Positions 2,372 to 48,890 are shown, counted from the stretch's first letter. The stretch is DNA of 53,742 nucleotides from Isurus oxyrinchus (GCA_026770705.1 JANJGN010001184.1:124001-177742), one strand, 5' to 3'. A program made the numbers and translations. Notes: a model not told the origin generated them from the sequence alone.

Positions 2372-2740
2372 TTGGACTGTCACAAGAGTGGAAAAGTGAC
2401 ACTCCACGAGAGGTGACAGCGCAGGAAGGTTCGTGTGTACAGATTCCATGTCATTACAGTTATCCATCGTGTCTGGAAAACCAACCGCGAGGTGGAGTCT
2501 GGTTTAATGACGAGAAACAGATTCCCTGGGCTCCCATTGCCTTTCACTCCAAGGATCACAGTCATGAGTTACCACGGTTCCACCATCGGACCCGGCTGTC
2601 TGGAGACCTGAAAGATGGCGACTGTTCCCTGATTATAAACAACATCAGACGGGAAGATGCAGGACCTTATTTTTTCAGAATAGAATTTGACAATGGTCCG
2701 AGCCATAACTATTACCCTGTAACCCAGCTTCACGTTTCTG
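2372..2740 (+). CDS. Siglec-like gene A, V-set sialic-acid-binding Ig domain exon (phase 1-1)
   Basis: ccccag acceptor and G|gtaagt donor, 369 nt open. GLSQEW..CVQIPC..W..GDCSLII..DAGPYFFRIE: Siglec B-E strand Cys pair, extra interdomain Cys and F-strand Arg (cf. CD33 YFFRME). Confidence 0.92.
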
Positions 2741-4055
2741 GTAAGTGCTGTGTTATAATTACTCAACAATTCACATTCAACACTCAATGGGAAATAACAC
2801 AAACTGTGATGTTTACATATTAACACAAAACACAGCTTATTATAACACACTGTCTGATTCTCAATAACCTGCTGATAGCTTCCAGTTCAGTCCTAAAGCA
2901 ACCTCTAATACTCACTTTAATATCAATGATTAAATGTATTGACTGTGTCCATCAATGTTATCAGGTTATCCACTCCCATCAGTCTACCTCATGCTTTTTA
3001 AATGTCTAACAATTTGACAAAAGAAGGATGTGCATTCCTATAGCGCCTTACACCACCTCAGCAAACTTCAAATCATTTCACAGACAATGAAGAAATTCTT
3101 GAAGTATAGTCACTGTCTAACGTGGCAGTGAGTTTGTGCACAGGAAGATCCCATAGAGAGCAATGGGATCAGTGACCCAGATCTCTGAGAGAATGATGAG
3201 CCAGGGTTCCATGAGCTGTGGGCTGCTCCATCACCCACACCCCAGTGTTGGCAATTCAAGGGTCTGGGAGTGAAAGTGTATTGAGCTCAGTGACACATTC
3301 CCCACCAAGTTTGAAAATAGGAAAGTTGCTGCTGATTGTTGTTACCTCTCAGTTCCCATCTCATCCTTGGAAACCTGCTTTCAAAATACAAAAGCAAGTC
3401 TCACATTTCCATAGCGCCTTTCACCACCTCAGGACGATCCTAAATCAATTCACAGTCAATGAAGTGATTCTTGAAGCACACATTCGCCCCACTCTCTGGG
3501 TAAAGAAGTTTCTCCTGAATTCCCCATTGGATTTATTAGTGAGGATCTTATATTGTCAGCCTCTGGTTTTGTTCATTGTGAGGAATGGAAACACTCTCTC
3601 CATGTCTACTCGATCAAAACCTTTCACTACTTCAAAGATCAAATGAGGTCACCACTCAACCTTCTCTGTTCAAGAGAACAGAGACCCAGACTGTACATCC
3701 TCTCCTGATAGGTAAAGCCTCACATTGCTGAGATCATCCTTGTGAAGCTTTTTACCACCCTCTCCAGTGTCTCTATATCCTTTTCCAAATGCTGAGTCTG
3801 TTCTCCCCGAGCTGTGAGCTGTTCCTCCACCCTCACCCAGTCTGGTCAAATCAAGGGTCACTGAGTGAGAGTGTATTAATCTGAGTGACAGAGATTCAAC
3901 AAGTGTAAAAATAGACAATTCTTAAATGATCATTGTAACCTCTCAGTTCTGATATCATCCTTGTAAAAGTGCTTTCTCGTGTGGGACTGTGATTTCTATT
4001 TGAACTGATGCTTCACGTTATATTTCTCTAAAAGGATCCATTCTCTGTCTGTTAG

Positions 4056-4352
4056 ATTTCACAGATAAACCCACGATATTCCTTGCTGAAATTATTGCAG
4101 GAAAGCGTGTGGATGTAAGCTGCACCTTCAACACAACGTGCAATGGAACAGCAGAACCTGTCTTAACCTGGGACACTCCCACTGACGTACCTGGATCAGT
4201 CTCAAACACTGTAACTCAGCATGGTGTCACTCTGACCTATACTTCTGTTCTGACCCTGATCCCATCACTCAAACACCACGGACACACACTCAGCTGCAGA
4301 GTGAGATATCCATCTGTTTCATCGGAGCGGACCCTCGTAATGACTGTGCTAT
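4056..4352 (+). CDS. Gene A, first C2-set Ig exon
   Basis: gttag acceptor, T|gtaagt donor, 297 nt open. DFTDKPTIF..VSCTFNTTCNGT..LTW..YTSVLTLIP..LSCRV, with the extra Cys typical of Siglec domain 2. Confidence 0.9.
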
Positions 4353-4524
4353 GTAAGTACAAACACCCTTCATTCTACATTAGCTGAATAGTATCAAATG
4401 TGCACAGCAAGCTCCCACATACTGCACTTTGTTTACCAACAAACCATTGGTGTTTCACTGGTAAAAAGTGACCCCTGACAGGCAGTACATCCTTACTACT
4501 GACTCTCCGACAGTGCATATTGGC

Positions 4525-7196: not shown

Positions 7197-7478
7197 ATGC
7201 TCCACGGAATCTCTCAATTACTTCTCCAGATATGATTAACGCTTCATCGATCAATATAATTGAGGGGAATTCTGCAGTGATAATCTGCTCTGTCGAGAGC
7301 TTCCCAGCTTCTAACCTGACGTGGCGACATCTTAATGTCCCAATGAACAGAACAAGTTCCAACAATGAGCTGTGGTTGGTGATTCCTCACGTTACATCCA
7401 GGGATACTGGAGAATATCAGTGTGTGGCAGAGAATGAACATGGAGCAGTGGAGGGGTTCCTAACCATTACTGTGGAAC
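7197..7478 (+). CDS. Gene A, second C2/I-set Ig exon
   Basis: ttttag acceptor, C|gtgagt donor, 282 nt. YAPRN..EGNSAVIICSVESFPASNLTW..DTGEYQCVAENEHG. Confidence 0.9.
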
Positions 7479-9188: not shown

Positions 9189-9328
9189 ACAGTGGAGGAG
9201 AGATTCTGCACGTGATCCTGATCCTGGGAATACGAGCTGTGATATTCCTTGTGGCTGTGGTTATCACTATCGCTGGAGTCTGTGTCTGGGAGAGACAAAC
9301 AGTGAAAGGAAGTCGACAGACTGTTTGA
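9189..9328 (+). CDS. Gene A, terminal TM exon with intramembrane Arg and short tail (activating type)
   Basis: ttctctag acceptor in phase 1 gives HSGGEILHVILILGIRAVIFLVAVVITIAGVCVWERQTVKGSRQTV*. No tyrosine motif. Confidence 0.82.
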
Positions 9329-12723: not shown

Positions 12724-14422
12724 ATTGTCTAAAAGCAGTTCTGATCTCTGGAGAGCTGTCGGACAAGAGGTGAGGTCTCATTAACTCCTTTCTCTTTCAC
12801 AGCTTGAGAGTGAGAAGCTGATGAAATATCTGCGAGTGGACAATGATCTTACTTCCTCCTGTCAGTTCTCCAAACTAATATCATCGTCAGCTCGGACAGA
12901 TTTATGGTTAATAGTCTTTGTAAAAGATCATTCTTATTGAGCTGTGATTGGGAACCGATTCAGCAGTGAGCCAGTGTATAAACTCAGACCAAGTCCCATT
13001 CACCCATCACCCCTGTGATCACTGATATTCACTGACTCCCTGTCTGACAGCAACAGAAAATTAAAATCCAGGTCATCCTGTAGAAATCCCTCCAAAATTT
13101 TGCAACTCTCCCTATCCATGTTACCTCCTCCAGCCCATACCAACCTCCCTATCTCTGTAACATCTTTCAGCACATATATTACTCCCTATATCTGTAACCT
13201 TGCCCTGCTCCTACAATCCTCCCTATCTCAGTAACCTCCTCCAGCCCCTACCACTCTCCCTAACTCTTTAACCAACTCCAGCCCCTATATCCTTCGCTAT
13301 CTCTGTTAATTTCTCCAGCCCCTACAAACCTCCCTTTCTCTGTAACCTCGTCCACCATTACAACCCTCCCTATTTCTGTAATCTCCTCCAGTACCTACAA
13401 CCCTCCGAGATCTCTGCACTCCTCCAATTCCAGCATCTTGACCATCCCCCGATTCCCATCATTCCATTATTGGCGGCCGTGCCTTCAGCTGCCTGGGCCC
13501 TGAGCTCTGGAATTCAAAATCAAAATTCAGGGATGAATTAACTCCGATAGTCCATTCCCTGAGAGGCCATGATTACATCACAGCAGCATTCAGAATAGAC
13601 AGAGGGTCCAGCCCTCACACTTCTTGCACAGTTTCACCATAACGAAATGAATTAACTGAAAGGTAAACCGTCAGTGTAGAGAGATGAGATATTTACACAG
13701 TTTCCCTGTGTATCTTGTAGACACTGTGTTGGGTGGAAGACTGGCTTCACTAAACAGGGTCCTGAGGACCATGAGCCAATGTAGAATGAACTTGTCCACT
13801 CCTGTGTCCAGGATTCTCTTCTATCCATTGTGATACATTGGGGAGATCCCTGTGTGTCCTCTAGATGGTCCACACTGCAGCCACTGTGCCCCAGTGATGG
13901 AGGGGGTGGATATCGAGTCTAGTGGATCTACAAACTATCCAGAGTTAAATATTTAGATTTCTCTCCCCAGTTGGACTGTCACAAGAGTGGAAAGGTGACA
14001 CTCCACGAGAGGTGACAGCGCAGGAATATTCGTGTGTACAGATTCCATGTCATTACAGTTATCCATCGTGTCTGGAAAACCAACCACAAATTGGAATCTG
14101 ATTTAATGACAAAGTCCTGATAAGATTCTTTATAGCCTTTCACTCCAAGGATCACAGTCACGAGTTACCACTGTTCCGGCATCGGACCCGGCTGTCTGGA
14201 GACCTGAAAGATGGTGACTGTTCACTGATTATAAACAACATCAGACGGGAAGATGCAGGACCTTATTTTTTCAGAATAGAATTTGACAATGGTCCGAGCC
14301 ATAACTATTACCCTGTAACCCAGCTTCACGTTTCTGGTAAGTGCTGTGTTATAATTACTCACCAATTCACATCCAACACTCAATGGGAAATAACACAAAC
14401 TCTGACGTTTACATAATAACAC

Positions 14423-15467
14423 TGTTATGACATGGCAGGTGATGTGTGCCAGGTGGAGAGAATCCACAAAGGGAACTTGGCCAAGCTACCACAATGGTTT
14501 TGCCATTTACATTTGTTGAGAGAAGGCTTATGATGTGAATGCATAAGAATTGAGTCCACTAACACCTTTAGATATTTTAAAATTATATTAAGAAATGTAT
14601 TAACAAAAGAAGAAACATTCAAACACATACAGAAGATTACAGTTACTTGATATTAGAACAAATTCCAAAATTTCTCATTAACCTAATTTCCAACTACACA
14701 CCCCCTTGAAGGCAACAATCCCAATAAATCTTAAATGGAAATGGGAATCCGGCAAGGTTACTGCAGCACCCACTTGACAGTGTAATTCCAAAGTCTTTTA
14801 ACACACCTATAAGCACTGGAGCAGCAAAAGTGAACAGAAACGTTTTACCTAAAAGGATCCATTCCCTGTCTGTTTGATTTCACAGATAAACCCATGATAT
14901 TCCCTGCTGAAATTATTGCAGGCAAGCGTGTGGATGTAAGCTGCACCTTCAACACAACGTGCAATGGAACAGCAGCACCTGTCTTCACCTACTGTACCTT
15001 TCAAGAAATTCATGTCCCCCTCCCACATAACATTCCATCCTTCTTTATGTTGGTTTCTCTCTCTCCAATGTATAAAATCCCATTGTTGCACCTGTCTTGG
15101 GAAATACACTTTTCCCATAATATAAAAATCTTTCATGTTGTCAATATGGCCCATTCCTTTTGGGAAGAATACACATAATAACCTTGCCCTGGTTATCTTG
15201 TTAATTATAAACACCCAACTACCCTTTGACAATCAAACATTCTCTTTACTGATCTAAAATTTCATTTACAGCTTTTCTGTGGAACCCTCATCCTAGCTTG
15301 TCCATCCCCATTTCAGAAGTCTGCTTTGCACCAAACTCTATTGATAGTTTTAACCTCACAGTTGATCTGACTCGAATTCAATTAAATCAGACCCGCAGAC
15401 GGAACCATCTACATTCATTCCCATAAGCCGACAATATTATTCTGAAAAATATCATAGTTTCATCACA
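14423..15467. mobile_element. Solo LTR-like element (TGTTATGA...TCATCACA) in pseudogene B intron
   Basis: Terminal inverted TG..CA, approximate TSD acac/acat, absent from paralogous introns. Reverse-complement homology to 49181-50132. Confidence 0.72.
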
Positions 15468-34760: not shown

Positions 34761-34888
34761 GTGCTTTGTGCAGATGTAATTTAATGAGACAGTCCAGTTG
34801 TCGGTGTAAGGTTACAGTGGGCTCTGTGTCTGTGCTGCACTGACTCTCTGCTATATGATAACCACAGTGTGATATTGTGTTATTGCAG

Positions 34889-34970
34889 GAGAAAGACAGC
34901 GATGGAGGAGAGAGTTTCAGGGACCAGTGACATTGCATTGACCCCCCGTTCACTCTCTGTGAATCACCAG
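34889..34970 (+). CDS. Cytoplasmic linker exon, cassette 1 (phase 2-0)
   Basis: ttgcag acceptor, CAG|gtacag donor, 82 nt. RKTAMEERVSGTSDIALTPRSLSVNHQ, in frame with the TM exon and the terminal exon. Confidence 0.78.
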
Positions 34971-35105
34971 GTACAGGAGCTGTTTACACTCACTCCAAAG
35001 TTTCAATCTCAGTGTGTAGACAACACGTGTCCCAGATTCCCAGCCCAGTTACCCACTGATTTGTACCTGTGGAGTCAGCAATGGTTTAGTATCATGCTGT
35101 CTCTC

Positions 35106-35859: not shown

Positions 35860-36400
35860 GTCTCTCTCTCTATCCCAACCTCCCTTTCTTCCTCTCTCTC
35901 TCTTTCTCTCTCTCTCATCCTCTCTCTGATTACAAGGTGCATGTTAATGAGCTTCACACCAGACACTTGAGTGCAGAATCCAACTGTCACTCACCAGAGC
36001 CATTACCGAGGGAGTGCAAGACTGACAGAGGGTCAGTACTGAGGGAGTGCTGCACTGTCGGAGGGTCAGTACTGAGGGAGAGCTGCACTGTCGGAGTGTC
36101 AGTACTGAGGGAGCGCTGCACTGTCGGAGGGTCAGTACTGAGGGAGCGCTGCACTGTCGGAGGGTCAGTAATGAGGGAGCGCTGCACTGTCGGAGGGTCA
36201 GTACTGAGGGAGTGCTGCACTGTCGGAGGGTCAGTCCTGAGGGAGCGTTGCACTGCCATAGGTGGTATCTTTCATATGACATGAGAGAGAGGGTTAAACC
36301 AACTGAGACACGACTGACATTAACAAGGCTGCACAATAATTTAACCCTATCAGTGCCAGTAAATGATGTGAGGATAACTTCTGTTTCGATTTCTCTGTAG

Positions 36401-36649
36401 GGTAAACAGAACGTGCTGATTACTGAGCCCCAGAACACAAAGAGAGACGCAACTGGCGAGGGGGAGACCCCAGCTCCCCGGGGTCTCTCTGAAGATGCAG
36501 TGGGAGGCGATGCTGGACATGGGAACCCCGACAAACCTGAAGAGTTTCTCTACGCCAATCCCCAAGTCTTGAGGATGTCCAGTGGTGATGGGTCTGTCCA
36601 CAGGGAAGAGGAGACGGAATACGCACAGATCAGGTTCGAGCATAACTGA
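36401..36649 (+). CDS. Terminal cytoplasmic exon, cassette 1 (FLYANP + ITSM TEYAQI)
   Basis: ctgtag acceptor, phase 0. GKQNVLITEP...EEFLYANPQV...EETEYAQIRFEHN*. Confidence 0.82.
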   Translation, partial: GKQNVLITEPQNTKRDATGEGETPAPRGLSEDAVGGDAGHGNPDKPEEFLYANPQVLRMSSGDGSVHREEETEYAQIRFEHN

Positions 36650-36845
36650 ATGAGAAATGGGGAGAGTGAGTGAGGAGGTATCAGGGTGGGGGTAGTGATT
36701 GAGATTCCTGGGAACAGGAAACAACCCACTGGGGGAGAGGGGGGAGAGGGAGGAAGGGATGGAATTGGGCTGCGGTTGGTGTGGTTTGGAATGAAATGCT
36801 TCTCCAGAGAGGACTGGATGCTGAGCCATTGGGGATAGAGATTCA

Positions 36846-36881
<36 letters not shown>

Positions 36882-37819
36882 GTCCCTCTCTCTCTCTCTC
36901 TCCCTGTCTCTGTCTTTCTTTCTGTGTCTGTCTCTCATTCCCTATCTCCAGCTCCTCCTTTAAGATGCCCGTTAATAACTGACTTTGTTGACTCAGCTGT
37001 TGGTCTCCTGTCCCTAATATCTCCTCATGTGGAGTCAGGTGAAGATGTCACTAACAAGCCCCGGATGAGCCTTGGGACATTTTGCTACATTGAAGGTGCT
37101 ATATAAATGCAAGTAGTTGTAGTGACTCTGATCTGCTTCGATTAACAATGGAACCACAAAGGCTCCTTCGACAGGGCGTGTGTGCAGCAGGGTCACAGTA
37201 AATACATTGAGATGTGAGATTTTTAATTCTTTCATCGAATGTGGCTGTCACTGGTGATGTCAGCGTTAATGCCCATCCCTAATTGCCCTTGAGAAGGTGG
37301 TGGTGAGCTGCCTCCTTGACCCGCTGCAGTCCATGTGGTGTAGGTACACCCACACTGCTGTTAGAGAGGTAGCTCCAGGTGTTTGACCCAGCGACAGTGA
37401 AGGAACGGTGATATATTTCCAAGTCAGGATGGTGAGTGACTTGGAGGGGAACTTCCAGGTGGTGGTGTTCCCATGTGTCTGCTGCCCTTGTCCTTCTAGA
37501 TGGTAGAGGTCGTGGGTTTGGAAGGTGCTGTTGAAGGAGCCTTTCCGAGTTGCTGCAGTGCATCTTGTAGATGGTACACACACTGCTGCCACTGTGTGTT
37601 CGTGGTGGAGGGAGTGAATGTTTAATGTGGGGGATGGGGTGTAGATCAATCGGGCTGCTTTGTCCTGGATGGTGTCAAGCTTCTTGATTCTGTGCTTTGT
37701 GCAGAGGTGATTTAAAGAGACAGTCCAGTCGTTGGTGTAAGGTTTCAGTGGGCTCTGTGTCTGTGCTGCACTGACTCTCTGCTATATGATAACCACAGTG
37801 TGATATTGTGTTATTGCAG

Positions 37820-37901
37820 GAGAAAGACAGCGATGGAGGAGAGAGTTTCAGGGACCAGTGACATTGCATTGACCCCCAGTCCACTCTCTGTGAAGCACCA
37901 G
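37820..37901 (+). CDS. Cytoplasmic linker exon, cassette 2
   Basis: Intact copy with ag/gt sites and open frame. Confidence 0.65.
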
Positions 37902-39431
37902 GTACAGGAGCTGTTTACACTCACTCCAAAGCTTCAATCTCAGTGTGTAGACAACACATGTCCCAGATTCCCAGCCCAGTTACCCACTGATTTGTACCTG
38001 TGGAGTCAGCAATGGTTCAGTATCATGCAGTCTCTCTGTTATGACACAGCAACTGGTAAAGGCTGTTGTTTAAAATCCCAGAGGGAAACTTTAAACAACT
38101 GTCATAACCTATATTTCCCAGTGGAATGTTTGAGATGCAGCTCTAAATTCAGGAATAAGACCACCAGTTCTTGAGATGGTTTTATATCAAACTACTTGAG
38201 ACATTTATTAATTTACACAAGTTAAACATATGCACATGGCTACAAACTAGTATTATCATAAATTTTTAACAAATTCTCAAACTAATCTCCTCTAAGACAA
38301 CCCATTGTCTTTAAGCAGACACCCAGGCAAAGCATTTTCACCTCACAAATTCCAAATGAGGTTCCTTTCACTTTGGTTCCTTTGCAGACAAGTATAGGCT
38401 TACCGCTGCTTTGCTGTTACAAGCGTCTGCTCTGCACACACAAAACTGCTCAAGTTATACCCAGCTCTTGAGTTTAAAGAAGACGGAGATTGATACGCTC
38501 TTGATTGGTCAGGGGATCAAAGGTTAGGGGAGAAGGTGGGAGAATGGGGTTTGTGAAACATATCAGCCATGTATGAATGGTGGAGCAGACTCGATGGACC
38601 GAATGGTCTAATTTCTCCTCCTATGTCTTATGGTCTTATGGCTTCTGTTTGAAGGTAAATTCGTAATGTATCATCAGGACCTTTGAACTCCATCTCTTCC
38701 AATAATAAATCCCCTTTCATCGTATCAATTTTATTAGTAATATAAACGTTGATTGGTTTAAGATTTCACTCTCAGACTTTGAATGTTTTATTTAAAAATG
38801 CAAATTACCACTTTACCTCTTTGTTTACATCTCAAAACTACTATACATCAAAGCACACAGACTGGCTGTCTTTAATCCAATTAAAATACACACAGACACA
38901 CACACAGACTAAACCTCTGTTTAAAAAGACAGTTTGCAATTACAATACAAAAATTAATAGATTAATAACACTCTGTCTCTATCCCTCCTCTATCCCTCTC
39001 TCTCATCCTCTCTCTGATTACAAGGTTCATGTTATTGAGCCTCACACCGGGCACCTGTGTGCAGCATCCAAGCCGGCACTCACCAGAGCCATTACCGATT
39101 GAGTGCGAGACTGACAGAGGCTCAGTACTGAGGGAGTGCTGCACTGTTGGAGGGTCAGTACTGAGGGTGTGCTTCACTGTCGGAGGGACAGTACTGAGGG
39201 AATGTTGAACTGTCGGAGGGTCAGTACTGAGGGAGCGCTGTATTGTCGGAGGGTCAGCACTGAGGGAGTGCTGCACTGTTGGAGGGTCAGTACTGAGGGA
39301 GTGCTGCACTGCCATAGGTGGTTTCTTTTATCCGATAGGAGAGAGAGAATTAAACGAGTCTGCACAATAATTTAACCCTATCAGTAACAGTAATTGATGT
39401 GAGGATGTCTTCTGTTTCCATTTCTCTGTAG

Positions 39432-39680
39432 GGTAAACAGAACGTGCTGATTACTGAGCCCCAGAACACAACCAGAGATACAACTAGTGAGGGGGAGACC
39501 CCAGCTCCCCGGGGTCTCTCTGAAGGTCCAGTGGGAGGCGATGTTGGACATGGGAACCCCGACAAACCTGAAGAGTTTCTCTACGCCAATCCCCAAGTCT
39601 TGAGGATGTCCAGTGGTGATGGGTCTGTCCACAGGGAAGAGGAGACGGAATACGCACAGATCAGGTTCGAGCATAACTGA
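39432..39680 (+). CDS. Terminal cytoplasmic exon, cassette 2 (FLYANP + TEYAQI)
   Basis: Intact acceptor and open frame to TGA. Confidence 0.68.
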   Translation, partial: GKQNVLITEPQNTTRDTTSEGETPAPRGLSEGPVGGDVGHGNPDKPEEFLYANPQVLRMSSGDGSVHREEETEYAQIRFEHN

Positions 39681-39905
39681 ATGAGAAATGGGGAGAGTGA
39701 GTGAAGAGGTATCAGGGTGGGGGTAGTGATTGAGATTCCTGGGAACAGGAAACAACCCACTGGGGGAGAGGGAGAGAGAGGGAGGAAGGGATGGAATTAG
39801 GCTGCGGTTGGTGTGGTTTGGAATGAAATGCTTCTCCAGAAAGGACTCAGTCCTTTCTGGAGAAGCATTTCATTTCACTGTCTCTCTCTCTCTCTCTCTC
39901 TCTCC

Positions 39906-39936
<31 letters not shown>

Positions 39937-40858
39937 CCTGTCTCTGTCTTTCTTTCTGTGTCTGTCTCTCATTCCCTATCTCCAGCTCCTCCTTTAAGAT
40001 GCCCGTTAATAACTGACTTTGTTGACTCAGCTGTTGGTCTCCTGTCCCTAATATCTCCTCATTTGCCTCAGAGTCAGGTGAAGATGTCACTAACAATCCC
40101 CGGATGAGCCTTGGGACGTTTTGCTACATTGAAGGTGCTATATAAATGCAAGTAGTTGTAGTAACTCTGATCTGCTTCGATTAACAATGGAACCACAAAG
40201 GCTCCTTCGACAGGGCGTGTGTGCAGCAGGATCACAGTAAATACATTGAGCTGTGAGATTTTTAATTCTTTCATCGAATGTGGCTGTCACTGGTGACGTC
40301 AGCGTTAATGCCCATCCCTAATTGCCCTTGAGAAGGTGGTGGTGAGCTGCCTTCTTGACCCACTGCGGTCCATGTGGTGTAGGTACACCCAAAGTGCTGT
40401 TAGAGAGGGAGTTCCAGGATTCTGACCCAGCGACAGTGAAGGAACGGTGATATATTTCCAAGTCAGGATGGTGAGTGACTTGGAGGGGAACTTCCAGGTG
40501 GTGGTGTTCCCATGTGTCTGCTGCCCTTGTCATTCTAGATGGTAGAGGTCGTGGGTTTGGAAGGTGCTGTTGAAGGAGCCTTGCTGAGTTGCTGCAGTGC
40601 ATCTTGTAGATGGTACACACACTGCTGCCACTGTGTGTTCGTGGTGAAGGGAGTGAATGTTTAATGTGGTGGATGGGGTGTCGATCAATCGGGCTGCTTT
40701 GTCCTGGATGGTGTCAAGCTTCTTGATTCTGTGCTTTGTGCAGAACTGATTTAAAGAGACAGTCCAGTCGTTGGTGTAAGGTTACAGTGGGCTCTGTGTC
40801 TGTGCTGCACTGACTCTCTGCTATATGATAACCACAGTGTGATATTGTGTTATTGCAG

Positions 40859-40940
40859 GAGAAAGACAGCGATGGAGGAGAGAGTTTCAGGGACCAGTGA
40901 CATTGCATTGACCCCCAGTCCACTCTCTGTGAATCACCAG
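40859..40940 (+). CDS. Cytoplasmic linker exon, cassette 3
   Basis: Intact copy. Confidence 0.65.
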
Positions 40941-42539
40941 GTACAGGAGCTGTTTACACTCACTCCAAAGCTTCTATCTCAGTGTGTAGACAACACATGT
41001 CCCAGATTCCCAGCCCAGTTACCCACTGATTTGTACCTGTGGAGTCAGCAATGGTTCAGTATCATGCAGTCTCTCTGTTATGACACAGCAACTGGTAAAG
41101 GCTGTTGTTTAAAATCCCAGAGGGAAACTTTAAACAACTGTCATAACCTATATTTCCCAGTGGAATGTTTGAGATGCATCTCTAAATTCAGGAATAAGAC
41201 CACCAGTTCTTGAGATGGTTTTATATCAAACTACTTGAGACATTTATTAATTTACACAAGTTAAACATATGCACATGGCTACAAACTAGTATTATCATAA
41301 ATTTTTAACAAATTCTCAAACTAATCTCCTCTAAGACAACCCATTGTCTTTAAGTAGACACCCAGGCAAAGCATTTTCACCTCACAAATTCCAAATGAGG
41401 TTCCTTTCACTTTGGTTCCTTTGCAGACAGGTGTAGGCTTACAGCTGCTTTGATGTTACAAGCCTCTGCTCTGCACACACAAAACTGCTCAAGTTATACC
41501 CAGCTCTTGAGTGTAAAGAAGACGGAGATTGATACGCTCTTGATTGGTCAGGGGATCAAAGGTTAGGAGAGAAGGTTGGAGAATTGGGTTTGTGAAACAT
41601 ATCAGCCATGTATGAATGGTGGAGCAGACTCGATGGACCGAATGGTCTAATTTCTCCTCCTATGTCTTATGGTCTTATGGCTTCTGTTTGAAGGTAAATT
41701 CGCAATGTATCATCAGGACCTTTGAACTCCATCTCTTCCAATAATAAATCCCCTTTCATCGTATCAATTTTATTAGTAATATAAACGTTGATTGGTTTAA
41801 GATTTCACTCTCAGACTTTGAATGTTTTATTTAAAAATGCAAATTACCACTTTACCTCTTTGTTTACATCTCAAAACTACTATACATCAAAGCACACAGA
41901 CTGGCTGGCTTTAATCCAATTTAAATACACACAGACACACACACAGACTAAACCTCTGTTTAAAAAGACAGTTTGCAATTACATTACATACATTAATAGA
42001 TTCATAACACTCTGTCTCTGTCCCTTCATCTCTATCTCTCTCTCTCATCCTCTCTCTGATTACAAGGATCATGTTATTGAGCCTCACACCAGGCACCTGA
42101 GTGCAGAATCCAAGCCGTCACTCACCAGAGCCATTACCGATTGAGTGCGAGGCTGACAGAGGGTCAGTACTGAGGGAGTGCTGCACTGTTGGAGGGTCAG
42201 TACTGAGGGAGTGCTGCACTGACGGAGGGTCAGTACTGAGGGAGTGCTGCACTGTTGGAGGGTCAGTACTGAGGGAGTGCTGCACTGACAGAGGGTCAGT
42301 ACTGAGGGAGTGCTGCACTGTCGATGGGTCAGTACTGAGGGAGCGCTGTATTGTCGGAGGGTCAGCACTGAGGGAGTGCTGCACTGTTGGAGGGTCAGTA
42401 CTGAGGGAGTGCTGCACTGCCATAGGTGGTTTCTTTTATCCGATAGGAGAGAGAGAATTAAATGAGTCAGCACAATAATTTAACCCTATCAGTAACAGTA
42501 ATTGATGTGAGGATGTCTTCTGTTTCCATTTCTCTGTAG

Positions 42540-42788
42540 GGTAAACAGAACGTGCTGATTACTGAGCCCCAGAACACAACCAGAGACACAACTAGTGAGG
42601 GGGAGACCCCAGCTCCCCGGGGTCTCTCTGAAGATGCAGTGGGAGGCGATGTTGGACATGGGAACGCCGACAAACCTGAAGAGTTTCTCTACGCCAATCC
42701 CCAAGTCTTGAGGATGTCCAGTGGTGATGGGTCTGTCCACAGGGAAGAGGAGACGGAATACGCACAGATCAGGTTCGAGCATAACTGA
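42540..42788 (+). CDS. Terminal cytoplasmic exon, cassette 3 (FLYANP + TEYAQI)
   Basis: Intact acceptor and open frame. Confidence 0.68.
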   Translation, partial: GKQNVLITEPQNTTRDTTSEGETPAPRGLSEDAVGGDVGHGNADKPEEFLYANPQVLRMSSGDGSVHREEETEYAQIRFEHN

Positions 42789-42985
42789 ATGAGAAATGGG
42801 GAGAGTGAGTGAAGAGGTATGGGGTTGGGGGTAGGGATTGAGATTCCTGGGAACAGGAAGCAACCCACTGGGGGAGAGGGGGAGCGAGGGAGGAAGGGAT
42901 GGAATTGGGCTGCGGTTGGTGTGGTTTGGAATGAAATGCTTCTCCAGAGAGGACTGGATGCTGAGCCATTGGGGATAGAGATTCA

Positions 42986-43019
<34 letters not shown>

Positions 43020-43974
43020 GGCTCTCTCCCTCTCTCTCTCTCTCTCTCCCTCCCTCTCTCTGTCTTTCTTTCTGTGTCTGTCTCTCATTCTCTATCTCCA
43101 GCTCCTCCTTTAAGATGCCCGTTAATAACTGACTTTGTTGACTCAGCTGTTGGTCTCCTGTCCCTAATATCTCCTCATGTGCCTCAAAGTCAGGTGAAGA
43201 TGTCACTAACAAGCCCCGGATGAGCCTTTGCACATTTTGCTACATTGAAGGTGCTATATAAATGCAAGTAGTTGTAGTAACTCTGATCTGCTTCGATTAA
43301 CAATGGAACCACAAAGGCTCCTTCAACAGGGCGTGTGTGCAGGAGGGTCACAATAAATACATTGAGCTGTGAGATTTTTAATTCTTTCATCGAATGTGGC
43401 TGTCACTGGTGATGTCAGCGTTAATGCCCATCCCTAATTGCCCTTGAGAACGTGGTGGTGAGCTGCCTTCTTGACCCGCTGCAGTCCATGTGGTGTAGGT
43501 ACACCCACAGTGCTGTTAGAGAGGGAGTTCCAGGAGTTTGACCCTGCGACAGTGAAGGAACGGTGATATATTTCCAAGTCAGGATGGTGAGTGACTTGGA
43601 GGGGAACTTCCAGGTGGTGGTGTTCCCATGTGTCTGCTGCCCTTGTCCTTCTAGATGGTAGAGGTCGTGGGTTTGGAAGGTGCTGTCGAAGGAGCCTTGC
43701 TGAGTTGCTGCAGTGCATCTTGTAGATGGTACACACACTGCTGCCACTGTGTGTTCATGGTGGAGGGAGTGAATGTTTAATGTGGGGGATGGGGTGTAGA
43801 TCAATCGGGCTGCTTTGTCCTGGATGGTGTCAAGCTTCTTGATTCTGTGCTTTGTGCAGAACTGATTTAAAGAGACAGTCCAGTTGTTGGTGTAAGGTTA
43901 CAGTGGGCTCTGTGTCTGTGCTGCACTGACTCTCTGCTATATGATAACCACAGTGTGATATTGTGTTATTTCAG

Positions 43975-44056
43975 GAGAAAGACAGCGATGGAGGAGAGAG
44001 TTTCAGGGACCAGTGACATTGCATTGACCCCCAGTCCACTCTCTGTGAAGCACCAG
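43975..44056 (+). CDS. Cytoplasmic linker exon, cassette 4
   Basis: Intact copy with tttcag acceptor. Confidence 0.65.
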
Positions 44057-45589
44057 GTACAGGAGCTGTTTACACTCACTCCAAAGCTTCAATCTCAGTG
44101 TGTAGACAACACATGTCCCAGATTCCCAGCCCAGTTACCCACTGATTTGTACCTGTGGAGTCAGCAATGGTTCAGTATCATGCTGTCTCTCTGTTATGAC
44201 ACAGCAACTGGTAAAGGCTGTTGTTTAAAATCCCAGAGGGAAACTTTAAACAACTGTCATAACCTATATTTCCCAGTGGAATGTTTGAGATGCATCTCTA
44301 AATTCAGGAATAAGACCACCAGTTCTTGAGATGGTTTTATATCAAACTACTTGAGATATTTATTAATTTACACAAGTTAAACATATGCACATGGCTACAA
44401 ACTAGTATTATCATAAATTTTTAACAAATTCTCAAACTAATCTCCTCTAAGACAACCCATTGTCTTTAAGCAGACACCCCGGCAAAGCATTTTCACCTCA
44501 CAAATTCCAAATGAGGTTCCTTTCACTTTGGTTTTTTTGCAGACAGGTGTAGGCTTACAGCTGCTTTGATGTTACAAGCGTCTGCTCTGCACACACAAAA
44601 CTGCTCAAGTTATACCCAGCTCTTGAGTGTAAAGAAGACGGAGATTGATACGCTCTTGATTGGTCAGGGGATCAAAGGTTAGGAGAGAAGGTTGGAGAAT
44701 TGGGTTTGTGAAACATATCAGCCATGTATGAATGGTGGAGCAGACTCGATGGACCGAATGGTCTAATTTCTCCTCCTATGTCTTATGGTCTTATGGCTTC
44801 TGTTTGAAGGTAAATTCGCAATGTATCATCAGGACCTTTGAACTCCATCTCTTCCAATAATAAATCCCCGTTCATCGTATCAATTTTATTAGTAATATAA
44901 ACGTTGATTGGTTTAAGATTTCACTTTCAGGCATTTAATGTTTTATTTACAAATGCAAATTACCACTTTACCTCTTTGTTTACATCTCAAAACTACTATA
45001 CATCAAAGCACACAGACTGGCTGGCTTTAATCCAATTAAAATACACACAGGCACACACACAGACTAAACCTCTGTTTAAAAAGACAGTTTGCAATTACAT
45101 TACATACATTAATAGATTCATAACACTCTGTCTCTGTTCTTTCATCTCTATCTCTCTCTCTAATCCTCTCTCTGATTACAAGGTTCATGTTATTGAGCCT
45201 CACACCAGGCACCTGTGTGCAGCATCCAAGCCGTCACTCACCAGAGCCATTACCGATTGAGTGCGAGACTGACAGAGGGTCAGTACTGAGGGAGTGCTGC
45301 ACTGTTGGAGGGTCAGTACTGAGGGAGTGCTGCACTGACAGAGGGTCAGTACTGAGGGAGTGCTGCACTGTCGTTGGGTCAGTACTGAGGGAGCGCTGTA
45401 TTGTCAGAGGGTCAGGACTGAGGGAGTGCTGCACTGTTGGAGGGTCAGTACTGAGGGAGTGCTGTACTGCCATTGGTGGTTTCTTTTATCCGATAGGAGA
45501 GAGAGAATTAAATGAGTCTGCACAATAATTTAACCCTATCAGTAACAGTAATTGATGTGAGGATGTCTTCTGTTTCCATTTCTCTGTAG

Positions 45590-45838
45590 GGTAAACAGAA
45601 CGTGCTGATTACTGAGCCCCAGAACACAACCAGAGACACAACTATTGAGGGGGAGACCCCAGCTCCCCGGGGTCTCTCTAAAGGTCCAGTGGGAGGCGAT
45701 GTTGGACATGGGAACCCCGACAAACCTGAAGAGTTTCTCTACGCCAATCCCCAAGTCTTGAGGATGTCCAGTGGTGATGGGTCTGTCCACAGGGAAGAGG
45801 AGACGGAATACGCACAGATCAGGTTCGAGCATAACTGA
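45590..45838 (+). CDS. Terminal cytoplasmic exon, cassette 4 (FLYANP + TEYAQI)
   Basis: Intact acceptor and open frame. Confidence 0.68.
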   Translation, partial: GKQNVLITEPQNTTRDTTIEGETPAPRGLSKGPVGGDVGHGNPDKPEEFLYANPQVLRMSSGDGSVHREEETEYAQIRFEHN

Positions 45839-46035
45839 ATGAGAAATGGGGAGAGTGAGTGAGTAGCTATGGGGTTGGGGGTAGGGATTGAGATTCCTGG
45901 GAACAGGAAGCAACCCACTGGGGGAGAGGGGGAGAGAGGGAGGAAGGGATGGAATTGGGCTGCGGTTGGTGTGGTTTGGAATGAAATGCTTCTCCAGAGA
46001 GGACTGGATGCTGAGCCATTGGGGATAGAGATTCA

Positions 46036-46070
<35 letters not shown>

Positions 46071-47026
46071 GCTCTGTCCCTCTCTCTCTCTCTCTCTCTC
46101 CCTCCCTCTCTCTGTCTTTCTTTCTGTGTCTGTCTCTCATTCTCTATCTCCAGCTCCTCCTTTAAGATGCCCGTTAATAACTGACTTTGTTGACTCAGCT
46201 GTTGGTCTCCTGTCCCTAATATCTCCTCATGTGCCTCAGAGTCAGGTGAAGATGTCACTAACAAGCCCCGGATGAGCCTTTGCACATTTTGCTACATTGA
46301 AGGTGCTATATAAATGCAAGTAGTTGTAGTAACTCTGATCTGCTTCGATTAACAATGGAACCACAAAGGCTCCTTCAACAGGGCGTGTGTGCAGCAGGGT
46401 CACAATAAATACATTGAGCTGTGAGATTTTTAATTCTTTCATCGAATGTGGCTGTCACTGGTGATGTCAGCGTTAATGCCCATCCCTAATTGCCCTTGAG
46501 AAGGTGGTGGTGAGCTGCCTTCTTGACCCGCTGCAGTCCATGTGGCGTAGGTACACCCACAGTGCTGTTAGAGAGGGAGTTCCAGGAGTTTGACCCAGCG
46601 ACAGTGAAGGAACGGTGATATATTTCCAAGTCAGGATGGTGAGTGACTTGGAGGGGAACTTCCAGGTGGTGGTGTTCCCATGTGTCTGCTGCTCTTGTCC
46701 TTCTAGATGATAGAGGTCGTGGGTTTGGAAGGTGCTGTTGAAGGATCCTTGCTGAGTTGCTGCAGTGCATCTTGTAGATGGTACACACACTGCTTCCACT
46801 GTGTGTTCGTGGTGGAGGGAGTGAATGTTTAATGTGGTGGATGGGGTGTAGATCAATCGGGCTGCTTTGTTGTGGATGGTGTCAAGCTTCTTGATTCTGT
46901 GCTTTGTGCAGAAGTGATTTAAAGAGACAGTCCAGTTGTCGGTGTAAGGTTTCAGTGGGCTCTGTGTCTGTGCTGCACTGACTCTCTGCTATATGATAAC
47001 AACAGTGTGATATTGTGTTATTGCAG

Positions 47027-47108
47027 GAGAAAGACAGCGATGGAGGAGAGAGTTTCAGGGACCAGTGACATTGCATTGACCCCCAGTTCACTCTCTGTGA
47101 AGCACCAG
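47027..47108 (+). CDS. Cytoplasmic linker exon, cassette 5
   Basis: Intact copy. Confidence 0.68.
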
Positions 47109-48641
47109 GTACAGGAACTGTTTACACTCACTCCAAAGCTTCAATCTCAGTGTGTAGACAACACATGTCCCAGATTCCCAGCCCAGTTACCCACTGATTT
47201 GTACCTGTGGAGTCAGCAATGGTTCAGTATCATGCAGTCTCTCTGTTATGACACAGCAACTGGTAAAGGCTGTTGTTTAAAATCCCAGAGGGAAACTTTA
47301 AACAACTGTCATAACCTATATTTCCCAGTGGAATGTTTGAGATGCAGCTCTAAATTCAGGAATAAGACCACCAGTTCTTGAGATGGTTTTATATCAAACT
47401 ACTTGAGATATTTATTAATTTACACAAGTTAAACATATGCACATGGCTACAAACTAGTATTATCATAAATTTTTAACAAATTCTCAAACTAATCTCCTCT
47501 AAGACAACCCATTGTCTTTAAGCAGACACCCCGGCAAAGCATTTTCACCTCACAAATTCCAAATGAGGTTCCTTTCACTTTGGTTTTTTTGCAGACAGGT
47601 GTAGGCTTACAGCTGCTTTGATGTTACAAGCGTCTGCTCTGCACACACAAAACTGCTCAAGTTATACCCAGCTCTTGAGTGTAAAGAAGACGGAGATTGA
47701 TACGCTCTTGATTGGTCAGGGGATCAAAGGTTAGGAGAGAAGGTTGGAGAATTGGGTTTGTGAAACATATCAGCCATGTATGAATGGTGGAGCAGACTCG
47801 ATGGACCGAATGGTCTAATTTCTCCTCCTATGTCTTATGGTCTTATGGCTTCTGTTTGAAGGTAAATTCGCAATGTATCATCAGGACCTTTGAACTCCAT
47901 CTCTTCCAATAATAAATCCCCGTTCATCGTATCAATTTTATTAGTAATATAAACGTTGATTGGTTTAAGATTTCACTTTCAGGCATTTAATGTTTTATTT
48001 ACAAATGCAAATTACCACTTTACCTCTTTGTTTACATCTCAAAACTACTATACATCAAAGCACACAGACTGGCTGGCTTTAATCCAATTAAAATACACAC
48101 AGGCACACACACAGACTAAACCTCTGTTTAAAAAGACAGTTTGCAATTACATTACATACATTAATAGATTCATAACACTCTGTCTCTGTTCTTTCATCTC
48201 TATCTCTCTCTCTAATCCTCTCTCTGATTACAAGGTTCATGTTATTGAGCCTCACACCAGGCACCTGTGTGCAGCATCCAAGCCGTCACTCACCAGAGCC
48301 ATTACCGATTGAGTGCGAGACTGACAGAGGGTCAGTACTGAGGGAGTGCTGCACTGTTGGAGGGTCAGTACTGAGGGAGTGCTGCACTGACAGAGGGTCA
48401 GTACTGAGGGAGTGCTGCACTGTCGTTGGGTCAGTACTGAGGGAGCGCTGTATTGTCAGAGGGTCAGGACTGAGGGAGTGCTGCACTGTTGGAGGGTCAG
48501 TACTGAGGGAGTGCTGTACTGCCATTGGTGGTTTCTTTTATCCGATAGGAGAGAGAGAATTAAATGAGTCTGCACAATAATTTAACCCTATCAGTAACAG
48601 TAATTGATGTGAGGATGTCTTCTGTTTCCATTTCTCTGTAG

Positions 48642-48890
48642 GATGAACAGAACGTGCTGATTACTGAGCCCCAGAACACAAAGAGAGACGCAACTAGCGA
48701 GGGGGAGACCCCAGCTCCCCGGGGTCTCTCTGAAGATGCAGTGGGAGGCGATGTTGGACATGGGAACCCCGACAAACCAGACGAGCTTTTCTACGCCAAC
48801 ATCAACTTTTCAAAGCTGCCCAGCGGTGACAGGACTGTGCACAGGAGCGAGGACACGGAATACACACAGATCAGGTTCCAGAAAAACTGA
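48642..48890 (+). CDS. Terminal cytoplasmic exon, cassette 5 (canonical ITIM LFYANI + ITSM TEYTQI)
   Basis: DEQNVLITEP...DELFYANINFSKL...EDTEYTQIRFQKN*. Same arrangement as CD33 LHYASL/TEYSEV. Confidence 0.82.
   Translation, partial: DEQNVLITEPQNTKRDATSEGETPAPRGLSEDAVGGDVGHGNPDKPDELFYANINFSKLPSGDRTVHRSEDTEYTQIRFQKN

What the first reader, a model, noticed from the sequence alone, without database searches (positions are those of the whole stretch)
2372..48890. Paired activating/inhibitory Siglec-like receptors in an apparently cartilaginous-fish locus
Seen: genes A and D have near-identical V-C2-C2 ectodomains, both keeping the sialic-acid-binding Arg (YFFRIE) and the Siglec Cys pattern. A ends in an Arg-containing TM with a ~12-aa tyrosine-free tail, while D is followed by an unrelated TM exon and ITIM/ITSM tails. 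Known: this is the logic of primate SIGLEC5/14 and SIGLEC11/16 pairs, where a basic TM residue recruits DAP12 or FcR-gamma. Inference: an independently evolved paired sialoglycan-sensing system outside mammals. Caveat: an N gap separates D's third Ig exon from the TM exon.
Basis: partly seen in the sequence, partly recalled or inferred. Interest (0 to 1): 0.88.

Follow-up and report, generated by a model that had tools for sequence, protein, structure and literature searches.

The report
Shark Siglec-like activating and inhibitory genes
This stretch of shark DNA holds part of a large family of Siglec-type immune sensor genes: one copy ends in an 'activate' membrane anchor, and a very similar copy probably ends in 'inhibit' tails, but an unread gap means that second link is not proven here.

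Summary
The window is shark DNA; the closest gene models are white-shark RefSeq 'Siglec-like' proteins. It carries four tandem Siglec-like copies.

- **A:** intact V, C2a and C2b exons, then a terminal exon with an Arg-containing TM and a 12-residue tyrosine-free tail.
- **B and C:** pseudogenes.
- **D:** intact leader, V, C2a and C2b exons, then the N gap (inside an intron), a unique TM exon, and five tandem cassettes of two cytoplasmic exons each.

Contigs from three runs, RNA by their exon-only depth, confirm the TM-to-cyt1 splice. No contig joins D's C2b exon to the TM exon. The one contig that shares this TM exon's unusual letters has a membrane-proximal Ig exon upstream that is absent from the window. 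A white-shark model (P0178) does join C2b directly to this TM type.

A and D are 97-99.5% identical over about 4 kb. The exception is a roughly 90-nt mosaic patch encoding the C-C' loop, which holds 13 of the 17 V-domain differences. A's V also carries the cysteine typical of a second V domain, so A probably has another V exon upstream of the window.

At family level, paired activating and inhibitory Siglec-like receptors in sharks are well supported. A and D as a strict pair is about 55-60% likely. The scan has reported this same family in other windows of this genome.

The parts
2372..2740 (+). Gene A V-set exon (phase 1-1). Has YFFRIE Arg, Cys21/26/84, and an extra Cys in YPSCL that marks non-first V domains.
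   Evidence: (V-set 7e-12, Ig_CD22 2.5e-9).
4065..4352 (+). Gene A first C2-set exon (C2a), with three Cys.
   Evidence: (C2-set_2 6e-9).
7197..7478 (+). Gene A second C2/I-type exon (C2b).
   Evidence: Ig_3 5e-13.
9189..9328 (+). Gene A terminal exon: Arg-containing TM (LGIRAV), a 12-residue Tyr-free tail and the stop codon.
   Evidence: It is 95.6% identical to the end of white-shark P0175 and P0179.
12765..16006 (+). Copy B, a pseudogene. The leader has an 8-bp deletion and a lost donor. The V exon (13971-14337) has an in-frame stop and a 3-nt deletion. There is a partial C2a at 14888-15010 and a full C2a at 15720-16006. It has no C2b or TM exon.
17555..22301 (+). Copy C, a probable pseudogene. 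The leader (17555-17594) is intact. The V exon (18456-18825) has two 1-bp deletions and its donor is GT>GG. C2a lies at 19690-19977. C2b is truncated (20302-20451). The Arg-TM exon starts at 22120 and has a shifted tail.
26158..26197 (+). Gene D leader exon (MIGKYYCLLSLLQ, donor GTAATA, phase 1).
27091..27459 (+). Gene D V-set exon. Keeps YFFRIE Arg and Cys21/26/84. The C-C' patch differs from A and there is no YPSCL Cys.
28784..29071 (+). Gene D C2a exon.
   Evidence: It is 98.9% identical to white-shark P0186.
33318..33599 (+). Gene D C2b exon. The donor GTGAGTTA runs to 33607.
   Evidence: Contigs cover it.
33608..33974 (.). Assembly gap (367 N) inside the intron after D's C2b exon. Its content was not examined.
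34071..34167 (+). TM exon (R-RDSSKWTVGLFTAGIMLSVLLAEIFIFICVRK), phase 1 to phase 2, present once in the window.
   Evidence: It is covered by contigs and spliced 34167>34889 in three runs.
34889..34970 (+). Cytoplasmic exon cyt1 of cassette 1 (phase 2 to 0). Copies lie at 37820-37901, 40859-40940, 43975-44056 and 47027-47108.
   Evidence: The GT..AG joint from the TM exon is.
36401..36649 (+). Tail exon cyt2 of cassette 1 (FLYANP, TEYAQI, stop). It has an internal phase-2 donor AG|GTTCGA at 36633/36634. Copies lie at 39432-39680, 42540-42788 and 45590-45838.
   Evidence: White-shark P0164, P0202 and P0208 show serial use of this exon.
48642..48890 (+). Tail exon cyt2 of cassette 5: canonical ITIM LFYANI, ITSM TEYTQI, then the stop.
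34277..48905 (+). Five tandem units of about 3.05 kb, 94-97.6% alike. Each carries cyt1, a 33-bp satellite and cyt2.

Best explanation
The window is a segment of a large, recently expanded Siglec-like receptor family in a shark (a lamnid or close relative). Gene A encodes an activating-type receptor. Its Siglec V and C2 domains end in a TM helix with a buried Arg and almost no tail, so it would signal only through an ITAM adaptor with an acidic TM residue (inferred). Gene D encodes the inhibitory-type counterpart: leader, V, C2a, C2b, possibly a further Ig exon hidden in the gap, then a TM exon and cytoplasmic exons bearing ITSM, YxN and ITIM tyrosines that would recruit SH2 phosphatases (inferred). 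The five tail cassettes may be used singly or spliced in series. A and D were homogenised recently over at least 4 kb by duplication or gene conversion. A mosaic patch encoding the C-C' loop escaped this, so the two share the sialic-acid-binding framework but probably not fine specificity. B and C are decayed copies.
For: Siglec identity:
- Pfam V-set, Ig_CD22, C2-set_2 and Ig_3.
- The top 17 solved-structure sequence hits are all Siglecs, with the essential Arg and QEG.C..PC aligned.
- The AF2 model has pLDDT 92.7, and its top 45 Foldseek matches are Siglec V domains with TM-scores mostly 0.80-0.89.

Shark origin and family size:
- RefSeq names from more than 20 elasmobranch species.
- The best matches are white-shark models: A's V is 97.5% identical to P0175.

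Gene A:
- In-phase exons and an Arg-TM terminal exon.
- The same ending is joined to the same V type in P0175, P0179 and P0190, and also in P0006 and P0022.

Gene D:
- Intact leader and exons.
- Phases fit along TM (phase 1 to 2), cyt1 (2 to 0) and cyt2 (0 to stop).
- The 34167>34889 GT..AG joint appears in contigs of three runs from three studies.
- White-shark P0178 reads leader-V-C2a-C2b-C2b then RRDSSKWT... TM-cyt1-cyt2, which is a direct C2b-to-TM junction.

Homogenisation:
- 97-99.5% identity from 2583 to about 6380, and 97% in the 3' half of C2b.
- dS is 0.017 outside the V patch and 0.60 inside it.
- The identity tract starts within about 20 nt of where A's homology to B and C starts (2338 against 2316); upstream, A and D are only 56% alike and an antisense ORF of retroelement look (2036-2467, judged by eye, no Pfam scan) runs into the V exon.
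Against: - No contig joins D's C2b exon to the TM exon.
- One contig in run X3 shares two of this TM exon's three unusual residues (Leu20, Glu23). Upstream it carries an exon ending like the membrane-proximal Ig domain of P0165, P0208 and P0001. That exon is nowhere in the window.
- The stated gap length of 367 leaves only 471 nt between C2b and the TM exon, little room for such an exon. Either the estimate is wrong or that contig comes from a paralogue.
- D's TM exon differs from the otherwise conserved family TM at three residues, including Gly>Glu in the membrane core. Contigs from three of the four runs carry the consensus letters instead.
- The cyt1 letters in the contigs match cassettes 2 and 4, not cassette 1.
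- A's leader is not in the window. Its V carries the 'later V' cysteine (0 of 28 first V domains, 7 of 10 later ones, p = 1e-5), so A's full ectodomain probably differs from D's.
- Expression of A was not tested.
Confidence: 0.58

Rival explanations
1. The gap hides a gene boundary. D is a recent duplicate of an A-type gene whose own Arg-TM exon lies in the unread stretch. The 34071 TM exon and the cassettes would then belong to a different Siglec-like inhibitory gene whose leader, V and membrane-proximal Ig exons are also unread.
For: - A and D are 97-99% identical up to the last readable base of C2b.
- In A and C the Arg-TM exon lies about 1.7 kb after C2b.
- The X3 contig with this TM exon's Leu20 and Glu23 has a membrane-proximal-type exon upstream that is absent from the window.
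- Post-gap sequence has no homology to A's downstream region.
- The family is tandemly repeated and therefore hard to assemble.
Against: - The gap estimate is only 367 N.
- D and the TM and tail exons lie on the same strand, with no leader or V between them in the readable sequence.
- White-shark P0178 shows a direct C2b-to-TM junction in this subfamily.
- Paralogues are very numerous in this genome, with 243 scan notes mentioning Siglec, so the X3 contig may come from another locus.
Confidence: 0.27
2. D's 3' part is not a working gene. The TM exon is decaying (Gly>Glu in the membrane core), and the five cassettes are unconstrained tandem duplicates or an assembly expansion. Only A would be functional here.
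For: - Three non-synonymous differences from the conserved family TM.
- Contigs from three of the four runs carry consensus letters rather than the window's.
- Cassettes 1-4 lack a canonical ITIM.
- Two of the four copies in the window are pseudogenes.
Against: - All ten cassette exons keep open frames and both splice sites, although the units differ by 2.4-6%.
- An X3 contig carries the window's Leu20 and Glu23 letters in spliced form.
- White-shark models P0164, P0202 and P0208 use the YANPQV-type tail and serial cassettes.
- Copies that differ by 2-6% are not an assembly duplication.
Confidence: 0.1
3. The family has the Siglec fold and the Arg but does not sense sialic acid. It would be an Ig-type paired receptor family for another ligand, for example a pathogen protein.
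For: - No binding data exist.
- The C-C' loop is hypervariable among members, as expected of receptors in an arms race.
- Multi-V architectures (P0001, P0165) are unlike mammalian CD33-related Siglecs.
Against: - The Arg in YFFR is near-invariant across 30 aligned homologues (R102).
- An aromatic residue lies where Siglec-5 and Siglec-7 have their A-strand aromatic, and the Cys pattern is kept.
- The best structural matches are ligand-bound Siglec V domains.
Confidence: 0.12

Closest known systems
Human SIGLEC5/SIGLEC14 and SIGLEC11/SIGLEC16 paired receptors
   Same: - Linked genes with a homogenised 5' part (V plus C2).
- One partner has an ITIM and ITIM-like tail.
- The other has a basic TM residue and a short tail, and in mammals needs DAP12. 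PMC4042635 describes Siglec-5/14 as paired receptors.
   Different: - The origin is independent, because homogenisation occurred within a shark lineage.
- The ligand-specificity loop (C-C') is not shared between A and D.
- A probably has an additional V domain.
- The inhibitory tail is encoded by five tandem two-exon cassettes.
- The linkage of D to the tail is unproven.
White-shark (Carcharodon carcharias) RefSeq models: P0178 'Siglec-10', P0175 and P0179 'Siglec-12', P0165 'Siglec-13', P0164, P0208
   Same: - Same exon types at 92-99% residue identity.
- Same Arg-TM ending, same RDSSKWT TM, same cyt1 and cyt2 exons.
- C2b-to-TM junction (P0178), membrane-proximal-Ig-to-TM junction (P0165) and serial cassettes (P0164, P0202, P0208).
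   Different: - They are automatic predictions from another assembly or species and none is identical to the window.
- None shows five cassettes.
- D's C-C' patch and its TM Glu are not seen in them.
Mammalian CD33-related Siglecs (CD33, Siglec-5, -7, -8, -10)
   Same: - V-domain sequence and fold, essential Arg, Cys pattern and V-C2 order.
- A two-tyrosine tail. The tail aligns without gaps to a turtle Siglec-like tail, with L.YA..FSK and TEY..IR in register (E = 9e-4).
   Different: - The V domain is about equally close to MAG and sialoadhesin, so subgroup membership is unresolved.
- Multi-V members exist.
- There is no significant tail similarity to a bat Siglec-8.
- A paper on teleost Siglecs states that fish genomes lack CD33-related Siglecs (PMC7226832); that study did not cover sharks.
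Other paired Ig receptor families (KIR, LILR, PILR; teleost NITR and LITR). This comparison comes from general knowledge, not from a test here.
   Same: Multigene clusters mix ITIM-tailed members with charged-TM members, and evolve by rapid birth and death with pseudogenes.
   Different: Their ligand-binding domains are not Siglec-type. PILR appears only as a weak hit (E about 7e-4).

Membership tests
Siglec family | N-terminal V-set Ig domain of the Siglec type | tested here: met
   - Pfam V-set 7.4e-12 and Ig_CD22 2.5e-9.
- The 17 best solved-structure sequences are all Siglecs, from 5e-16 to 2.5e-12; the next family is at 1e-8.
- The AF2 model has pLDDT 92.7, and Foldseek ranks 1-45 are all Siglec V domains.
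Siglec family | Essential Arg on the F strand that binds the sialic-acid carboxylate | tested here: met
   The R in YFFRIE aligns with the R in YFFRVE of Siglec-5 and YFFRME of Siglec-7. It is present in A and D and near-invariant in 30 homologues (R102).
Siglec family | Unusual cysteine pattern: two Cys near the B strand, one on the E strand, and an extra Cys in the first C2 domain for an inter-domain bond | tested here: inconclusive
   The cysteines are present at the aligned places: QEGSC, (P/R)C and DCSL in V, and C..C....C in C2a. Disulfide connectivity itself was not examined.
Siglec family | V domain followed by C2-set domains, a single TM and a cytoplasmic tail | tested here: met
   C2-set_2 6e-9 and Ig_3 5e-13.
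Siglec family | Sialic-acid-dependent ligand binding | not testable with these tools
   This needs glycan arrays or cell binding with sialidase treatment and Arg>Ala controls.
CD33-related Siglec subgroup | V domain groups with CD33-related members rather than with MAG, sialoadhesin, CD22 or Siglec-15 | tested here: inconclusive
   Scores in bits: Siglec-5 62, Siglec-7 and -8 57, CD33 56, MAG 53.5, sialoadhesin 50, Siglec-15 37, CD22 26. It is clearly not CD22 or Siglec-15 type, but it is not separable from MAG or sialoadhesin. No tree was built because no reference sequences were available by id.
CD33-related Siglec subgroup | Tail with a membrane-proximal ITIM and a distal ITIM-like or ITSM motif | tested here: met
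   Cassette 5 has LFYANI and TEYTQI. Cassettes 1-4 have FLYANP (not an ITIM) and TEYAQI.
CD33-related Siglec subgroup | Orthology or synteny with the mammalian CD33-related cluster | not tested
Paired activating/inhibitory receptors (Siglec-5/14 type) | Activating partner with a basic residue in the TM and a short tail without signalling motifs | tested here: met
   Gene A's last exon. The same exon ends P0175, P0179, P0190, P0006 and P0022.
Paired activating/inhibitory receptors (Siglec-5/14 type) | Inhibitory partner whose similar ectodomain is joined to the ITIM tail in one transcript | tested here: inconclusive
   The gap lies between C2b and the TM exon. The TM-to-cyt1 splice is confirmed, but no contig links C2b to the TM exon. 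The analogous junction exists in white-shark P0178.
Paired activating/inhibitory receptors (Siglec-5/14 type) | Ligand-binding domains kept alike, so that both partners see the same ligand | tested here: not met
   For A against D, the framework is 98-99% identical, but 13 of the 17 V differences lie in the B-C to C' patch (dS 0.60 there against 0.017 elsewhere). At family level the feature is met: P0165 and P0175 share the C-C' loop.
Paired activating/inhibitory receptors (Siglec-5/14 type) | Association of the activating partner with an ITAM adaptor (DAP12 or FcR-gamma) | not testable with these tools
   A literature search found nothing on shark adaptors. This needs co-expression and co-immunoprecipitation.

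The most novel reading that the evidence does not exclude
A and D are a true gene-converted activating/inhibitory Siglec pair that arose independently in sharks. D's inhibitory tail would be built from a five-unit cassette array that splicing can use singly or in series, so one gene could produce tails with one to five ITSM/YxN modules ending in an ITIM. The specificity loop would be kept deliberately different between the partners. This would put CD33-type paired sialoglycan sensing, plus a new way of tuning inhibitory strength, at the base of jawed vertebrates.
Probability: 0.3. Interest if true: 0.75.

Novelty: new member of a known kind. Interest (0 to 1): 0.55.

Why it matters
A paper on teleost Siglecs states that fish genomes lack CD33-related inhibitory Siglecs (PMC7226832), and I found no paper on shark Siglec clusters. 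A large elasmobranch family with both Arg-TM and ITIM/ITSM members would have several consequences:

- It would move the origin of this receptor logic, or a convergent re-invention of it, to the oldest living jawed vertebrates.
- It would give a natural case for studying how gene conversion and mosaic patches shape paired receptors.
- It would supply testable reagents, namely A and D ectodomains that differ almost only in the C-C' loop.

The weight of this particular window is limited. The genes are already predicted and named Siglec-like in RefSeq for many sharks and rays. The scan has flagged the same family in other windows. And the key A/D link is interrupted by a gap.

Tried and rejected
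- **Bridging the gap with reads.** I laid contigs from four runs on 33300-35880. None links C2b to the TM exon. The loose ends were used only to classify the upstream exon type. I did not fill or reconstruct the gap.
- **Joined spliced protein search.** All searches were exon by exon, by reference or with database protein ids.
- **Positive selection on the V patch.** Rejected, because dS is also very high there (0.60 against dN 0.26). The patch is a mosaic of older sequence.
- **'A and D have old, diverged 3' parts'.** Rejected, because the 3' half of C2b is 97% identical.
- **Other copies of the D-type TM exon or a membrane-proximal Ig exon in the window.** None found.
- **A leader exon for A.** Not in the window.
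- **Tail against bat Siglec-8.** No similarity.
- **Shark DAP12 or FcR-gamma in the literature.** Nothing useful.
- **Complex prediction.** Not used, because no adaptor sequence was available.

Full report
**What the window is.** The window is vertebrate genomic DNA with retroelement fragments and 33-bp satellites. [quoted passage not shown] The closest are white-shark (Carcharodon carcharias) models: A's V exon is 97.5% identical to P0175, D's C2a is 98.9% identical to P0186, and cassette-2 cyt1 is 100% identical to P0164 and P0208. The cartilaginous-fish guess is therefore right, and the species is a lamnid or a close relative. I found no protein identical to the window.

**Layout of the window.** A self-comparison and an exon-by-exon tblastn show four tandem copies on the + strand.

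| Copy | State | Exons |
|---|---|---|
| A | intact | V 2372-2740, C2a 4065-4352, C2b 7197-7478, terminal exon 9189-9328 |
| B | pseudogene | leader with 8-bp deletion and lost donor; V with in-frame stop and 3-nt deletion; no C2b or TM exon |
| C | probable pseudogene | intact leader 17555-17594; V with two 1-bp deletions and donor GT>GG; truncated C2b; Arg-TM exon with shifted tail |
| D | intact | leader 26158-26197 (MIGKYYCLLSLLQ), V 27091-27459, C2a 28784-29071, C2b 33318-33599 |

All of A's exons have consensus splice sites and a phase-1 frame. Its terminal exon reads ...LGIRAV...CVW-ERQTVKGSRQTV*. The evidence for B and C is, and for D.

**The gap, tested first.**
- D's C2b exon ends with its donor (GTGAGTTA), and the N run starts at the ninth intron base (33608). 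The gap is therefore intronic on its left side.
- On the right, 96 readable bases precede an acceptor (AG at 34069-34070) and a 97-nt TM exon at 34071-34167. This exon is unique in the window.
- C2b ends in phase 1 and the TM exon starts in phase 1, giving ...TVE-R-RDSSKW... However, every Ig exon in this family is phase 1-1, so frame compatibility says nothing about continuity.

**The tail.**
- The TM exon ends in phase 2 (AA|GTAAGT). A direct splice to the ITIM/ITSM exon would be out of frame.
- White-shark and basking-shark models (P0012, P0003) revealed an intermediate exon. It is present in all five cassettes: cyt1, G-AGA-AAG...CAG|GT, phase 2 to 0, for example 34889-34970.
- Cassettes 1-4 encode FLYANPQV and TEYAQI. 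Cassette 5 encodes LFYANI, a canonical ITIM, and TEYTQI.
- Every cyt2 exon also contains a phase-2 donor, AG|GTTC, just after TEY.QIR. White-shark models P0164, P0202 and P0208 use this donor to splice cyt2 onto the next cyt1. The array could therefore be read in series.

**Transcript evidence.**
- Twenty-two runs hold D's V exon words. I laid four of them, from four studies, on 33300-35880.
- In X1, X3 and X2 the depth is confined to C2b, the TM exon and cyt1, apart from repeat-derived signal. This is the pattern expected of RNA, although the run type is only a guess in the records.
- The joint 34167>34889 (GT..AG) appears in one contig in each of X1, X3 and X2. This confirms the TM-to-cyt1 splice exactly as predicted.
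- No listed contig joins D's C2b to the TM exon.
- The X1 contig (739 nt) and the X3 contig (340 nt) that contain the TM exon continue upstream into sequence that does not lie on the stretch.
- The 30 loose letters shown for X3 translate to the end of the membrane-proximal Ig domain seen in P0001, P0015, P0017, P0165 and P0208 (...AMFKVYLWVK). tblastn finds no such exon in the window.
- D's TM exon differs from the conserved family TM at three residues (L11F, F20L, G23E). X1, X2 and X19 carry consensus letters at two or all three of these places. X3 carries the window's Leu20 and Glu23.
- The cyt1 letters in the contigs are those of cassettes 2 and 4, not cassette 1.
- The C2b contigs are mixtures of A-like and D-like letters. 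One X1 contig has a C2b exon preceded by another C2b exon, an arrangement seen in P0178 but not in D.
- With hundreds of family notes in this genome, paralogues cannot be excluded as the source of any of these contigs.

**Evidence from related gene models.**
- White-shark P0178 reads leader-V-C2a-C2b-C2b, then RRDSSKWTVGLLTAG... TM, then cyt1 and cyt2. This is a direct C2b-to-TM junction, as proposed for D.
- P0165 reads leader-V1-V2-C2a-membrane-proximal Ig-TM-cyt1-cyt2.
- P0152 joins C2a directly to the TM exon.
- P0175, P0179 and P0190 read (V1)-V2-C2a-Arg-TM. P0006 and P0022 read V...C2b-Arg-TM.
- Both endings are thus repeatedly modelled on this V family. The same V2 type (YPSCLENQPRGGVWFN.EKQIPWAP) occurs with the Arg-TM ending (P0175) and with the inhibitory tail (P0165, P0164). 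This is the family-level support for paired receptors.

**How alike are A and D?**
- Sliding identity is 97-99.5% from 2583 to about 6380 and 97% in the 3' half of C2b. The first 200 nt of the V exon are only 87% identical.
- Intron 1 is 98.7% identical and the V exon 92.4%.
- Thirteen of the 17 V replacements fall in codons 25-53, which cover the B-C loop, C strand, C-C' loop and C' strand. In that patch dS is 0.60 and dN 0.26. Outside it they are 0.017 and 0.014.
- The patch is therefore older sequence embedded in a recently homogenised tract, not fresh positive selection.
- The tract begins within about 20 nt of the point where A's own homology to B and C begins (2338 against 2316). Upstream of that point A and D are only 56% alike, and an antisense ORF of retroelement look (2036-2467, judged by eye, no Pfam scan) runs into A's V exon. 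This fits gene conversion stopped by heterology, or a duplication breakpoint at that spot.
- D also has an insertion of about 2 kb in intron 2 (31054-33027).

**Gene A is probably longer than it appears.**
- A's V carries Cys in YPSCL. Among the fetched elasmobranch proteins, 0 of 28 leader-adjacent V domains have this Cys, against 7 of 10 V domains that follow another V (Fisher p = 1e-5). An earlier scan note, s1-300797, pointed me to this marker.
- The nearest white-shark models of A (P0175, P0179) have a V1 in front.
- No leader for A lies in the 2.3 kb available upstream.
- A's ectodomain is therefore likely V1-V2-C2a-C2b, whereas D, which has its own leader and no marker Cys, is V-C2a-C2b.

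**Family membership.**
- The V exon hits Pfam V-set and Ig_CD22.
- Its 17 best solved-structure sequences are all Siglecs, with the essential Arg, the QEG.C..PC motif and the DCSL Cys aligned.
- An AF2 model (pLDDT 92.7) has Siglec V domains as its top 45 structural matches.
- It is about equally close to CD33-related Siglecs, MAG and sialoadhesin, and far from CD22 and Siglec-15. I therefore file it as Siglec family with the subgroup unresolved.
- The tail aligns without gaps to the last 50 residues of a turtle Siglec-like protein, with both tyrosine motifs in register (E = 9e-4). It does not align to a bat Siglec-8.

**Mechanism.**
- Shown: the exon structures, the motifs and one splice.
- Inferred from established knowledge of immunoreceptors: A's buried Arg would require an ITAM adaptor with an acidic TM residue for surface expression and signalling. 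D's phosphorylated ITIM and ITSM would recruit SHP-type phosphatases. The YxN motif could bind Grb2.
- Which adaptor A uses cannot be read from the sequence.

**Literature.** A study of teleost Siglecs states that fish regularly have only Siglec-1, CD22, MAG and Siglec-15, and that fish genomes lack CD33-related Siglecs (PMC7226832). It does not mention sharks. The whale-shark genome paper only lists Siglecs among Ig families (PMC8455134). I found no paper on this shark family.

**Verdict.**
- Activating and inhibitory Siglec-like receptors in sharks at family level: about 0.85.
- D's Ig exons and the TM and tail exons forming one gene: about 0.6. About half of that includes an extra Ig exon hidden in the gap.
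- A gene boundary hidden in the gap: about 0.27.
- A and D are not a strict same-ligand pair, because the C-C' loop differs and A probably has an extra V domain.

The family is already predicted in RefSeq, and the scan has reported it in other windows of this genome (s1-300785 and others). This is therefore a new member of a known kind, of moderate interest.

Noticed in passing
36633/36634, 39664/39665, 42772/42773, 45822/45823, 48874/48875: Each tail exon has an internal phase-2 donor (CAGATCAG|GTTC) just after TEY.QIR. White-shark models P0164, P0202 and P0208 splice from there to the next cassette's cyt1 exon. The five cassettes could therefore be read in series, giving tails with several ITSM/YxN modules.
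   Followed up: partly
34103, 34132, 34140 (TM exon 34071-34167): D's TM exon has three non-synonymous differences from the otherwise conserved family TM, including Gly>Glu in the membrane core. Contigs from three runs carry consensus letters at two or all three of these places, and one (X3) carries the window's Leu and Glu.
   Followed up: partly
2440-2540 and 27160-27260: A roughly 90-nt patch of the V exon (B-C loop to C' strand) is about 28% divergent between A and D, inside a tract that is otherwise 98-99% identical. B has a third version of the patch and C resembles A. This region is hypervariable across the whole family.
   Followed up: yes
2467-2475 (YPSCL in A's V); also in B's V at about 14066: The extra Cys after YPS marks V domains that follow another V domain: 0 of 28 first V domains have it, against 7 of 10 later ones. 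This implies that gene A starts with another V exon upstream of the window.
   Followed up: yes
10749-11419, 16213-16721, 23668-25387, 33018-33173, 36021-36255 and once per cassette: 33-bp satellite arrays accompany every gene copy. In the cassette region they lie in the opposite orientation, and the cumulative GC skew turns from falling to rising at about 34 kb.
   Followed up: no
31054-33027: D-specific insertion of about 2 kb in intron 2. It has minus-strand ORFs that look integrase-like by eye (31364-31973), but there was no Pfam hit at E <= 0.01.
   Followed up: partly
4895-5296 (-), 29616-30020 (-), 49997-50479 (+): Reverse-transcriptase fragments. RVT_1 scores 1e-7 at 4895-5296 and 5e-8 at 49997-50479. 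The A and D intron copies lie inside the homogenised tract.
   Followed up: partly
33318 (loose end in run X1): One contig has a D-like C2b exon directly preceded by the end of another C2b-type exon. This arrangement is present in white-shark P0178 but not in D, so it comes from a paralogue.
   Followed up: no
52645-53629: Low-complexity Pro/Leu/Ser-rich repeat with long ORFs on both strands and no Pfam match.
   Followed up: no
43352 and 46404: AATAAA lies about 565 nt after the stops of cassettes 3 and 4, right at the unit boundary. No AATAAA or ATTAAA lies within 700 nt of the stops of cassettes 1, 2 and 5.
   Followed up: no
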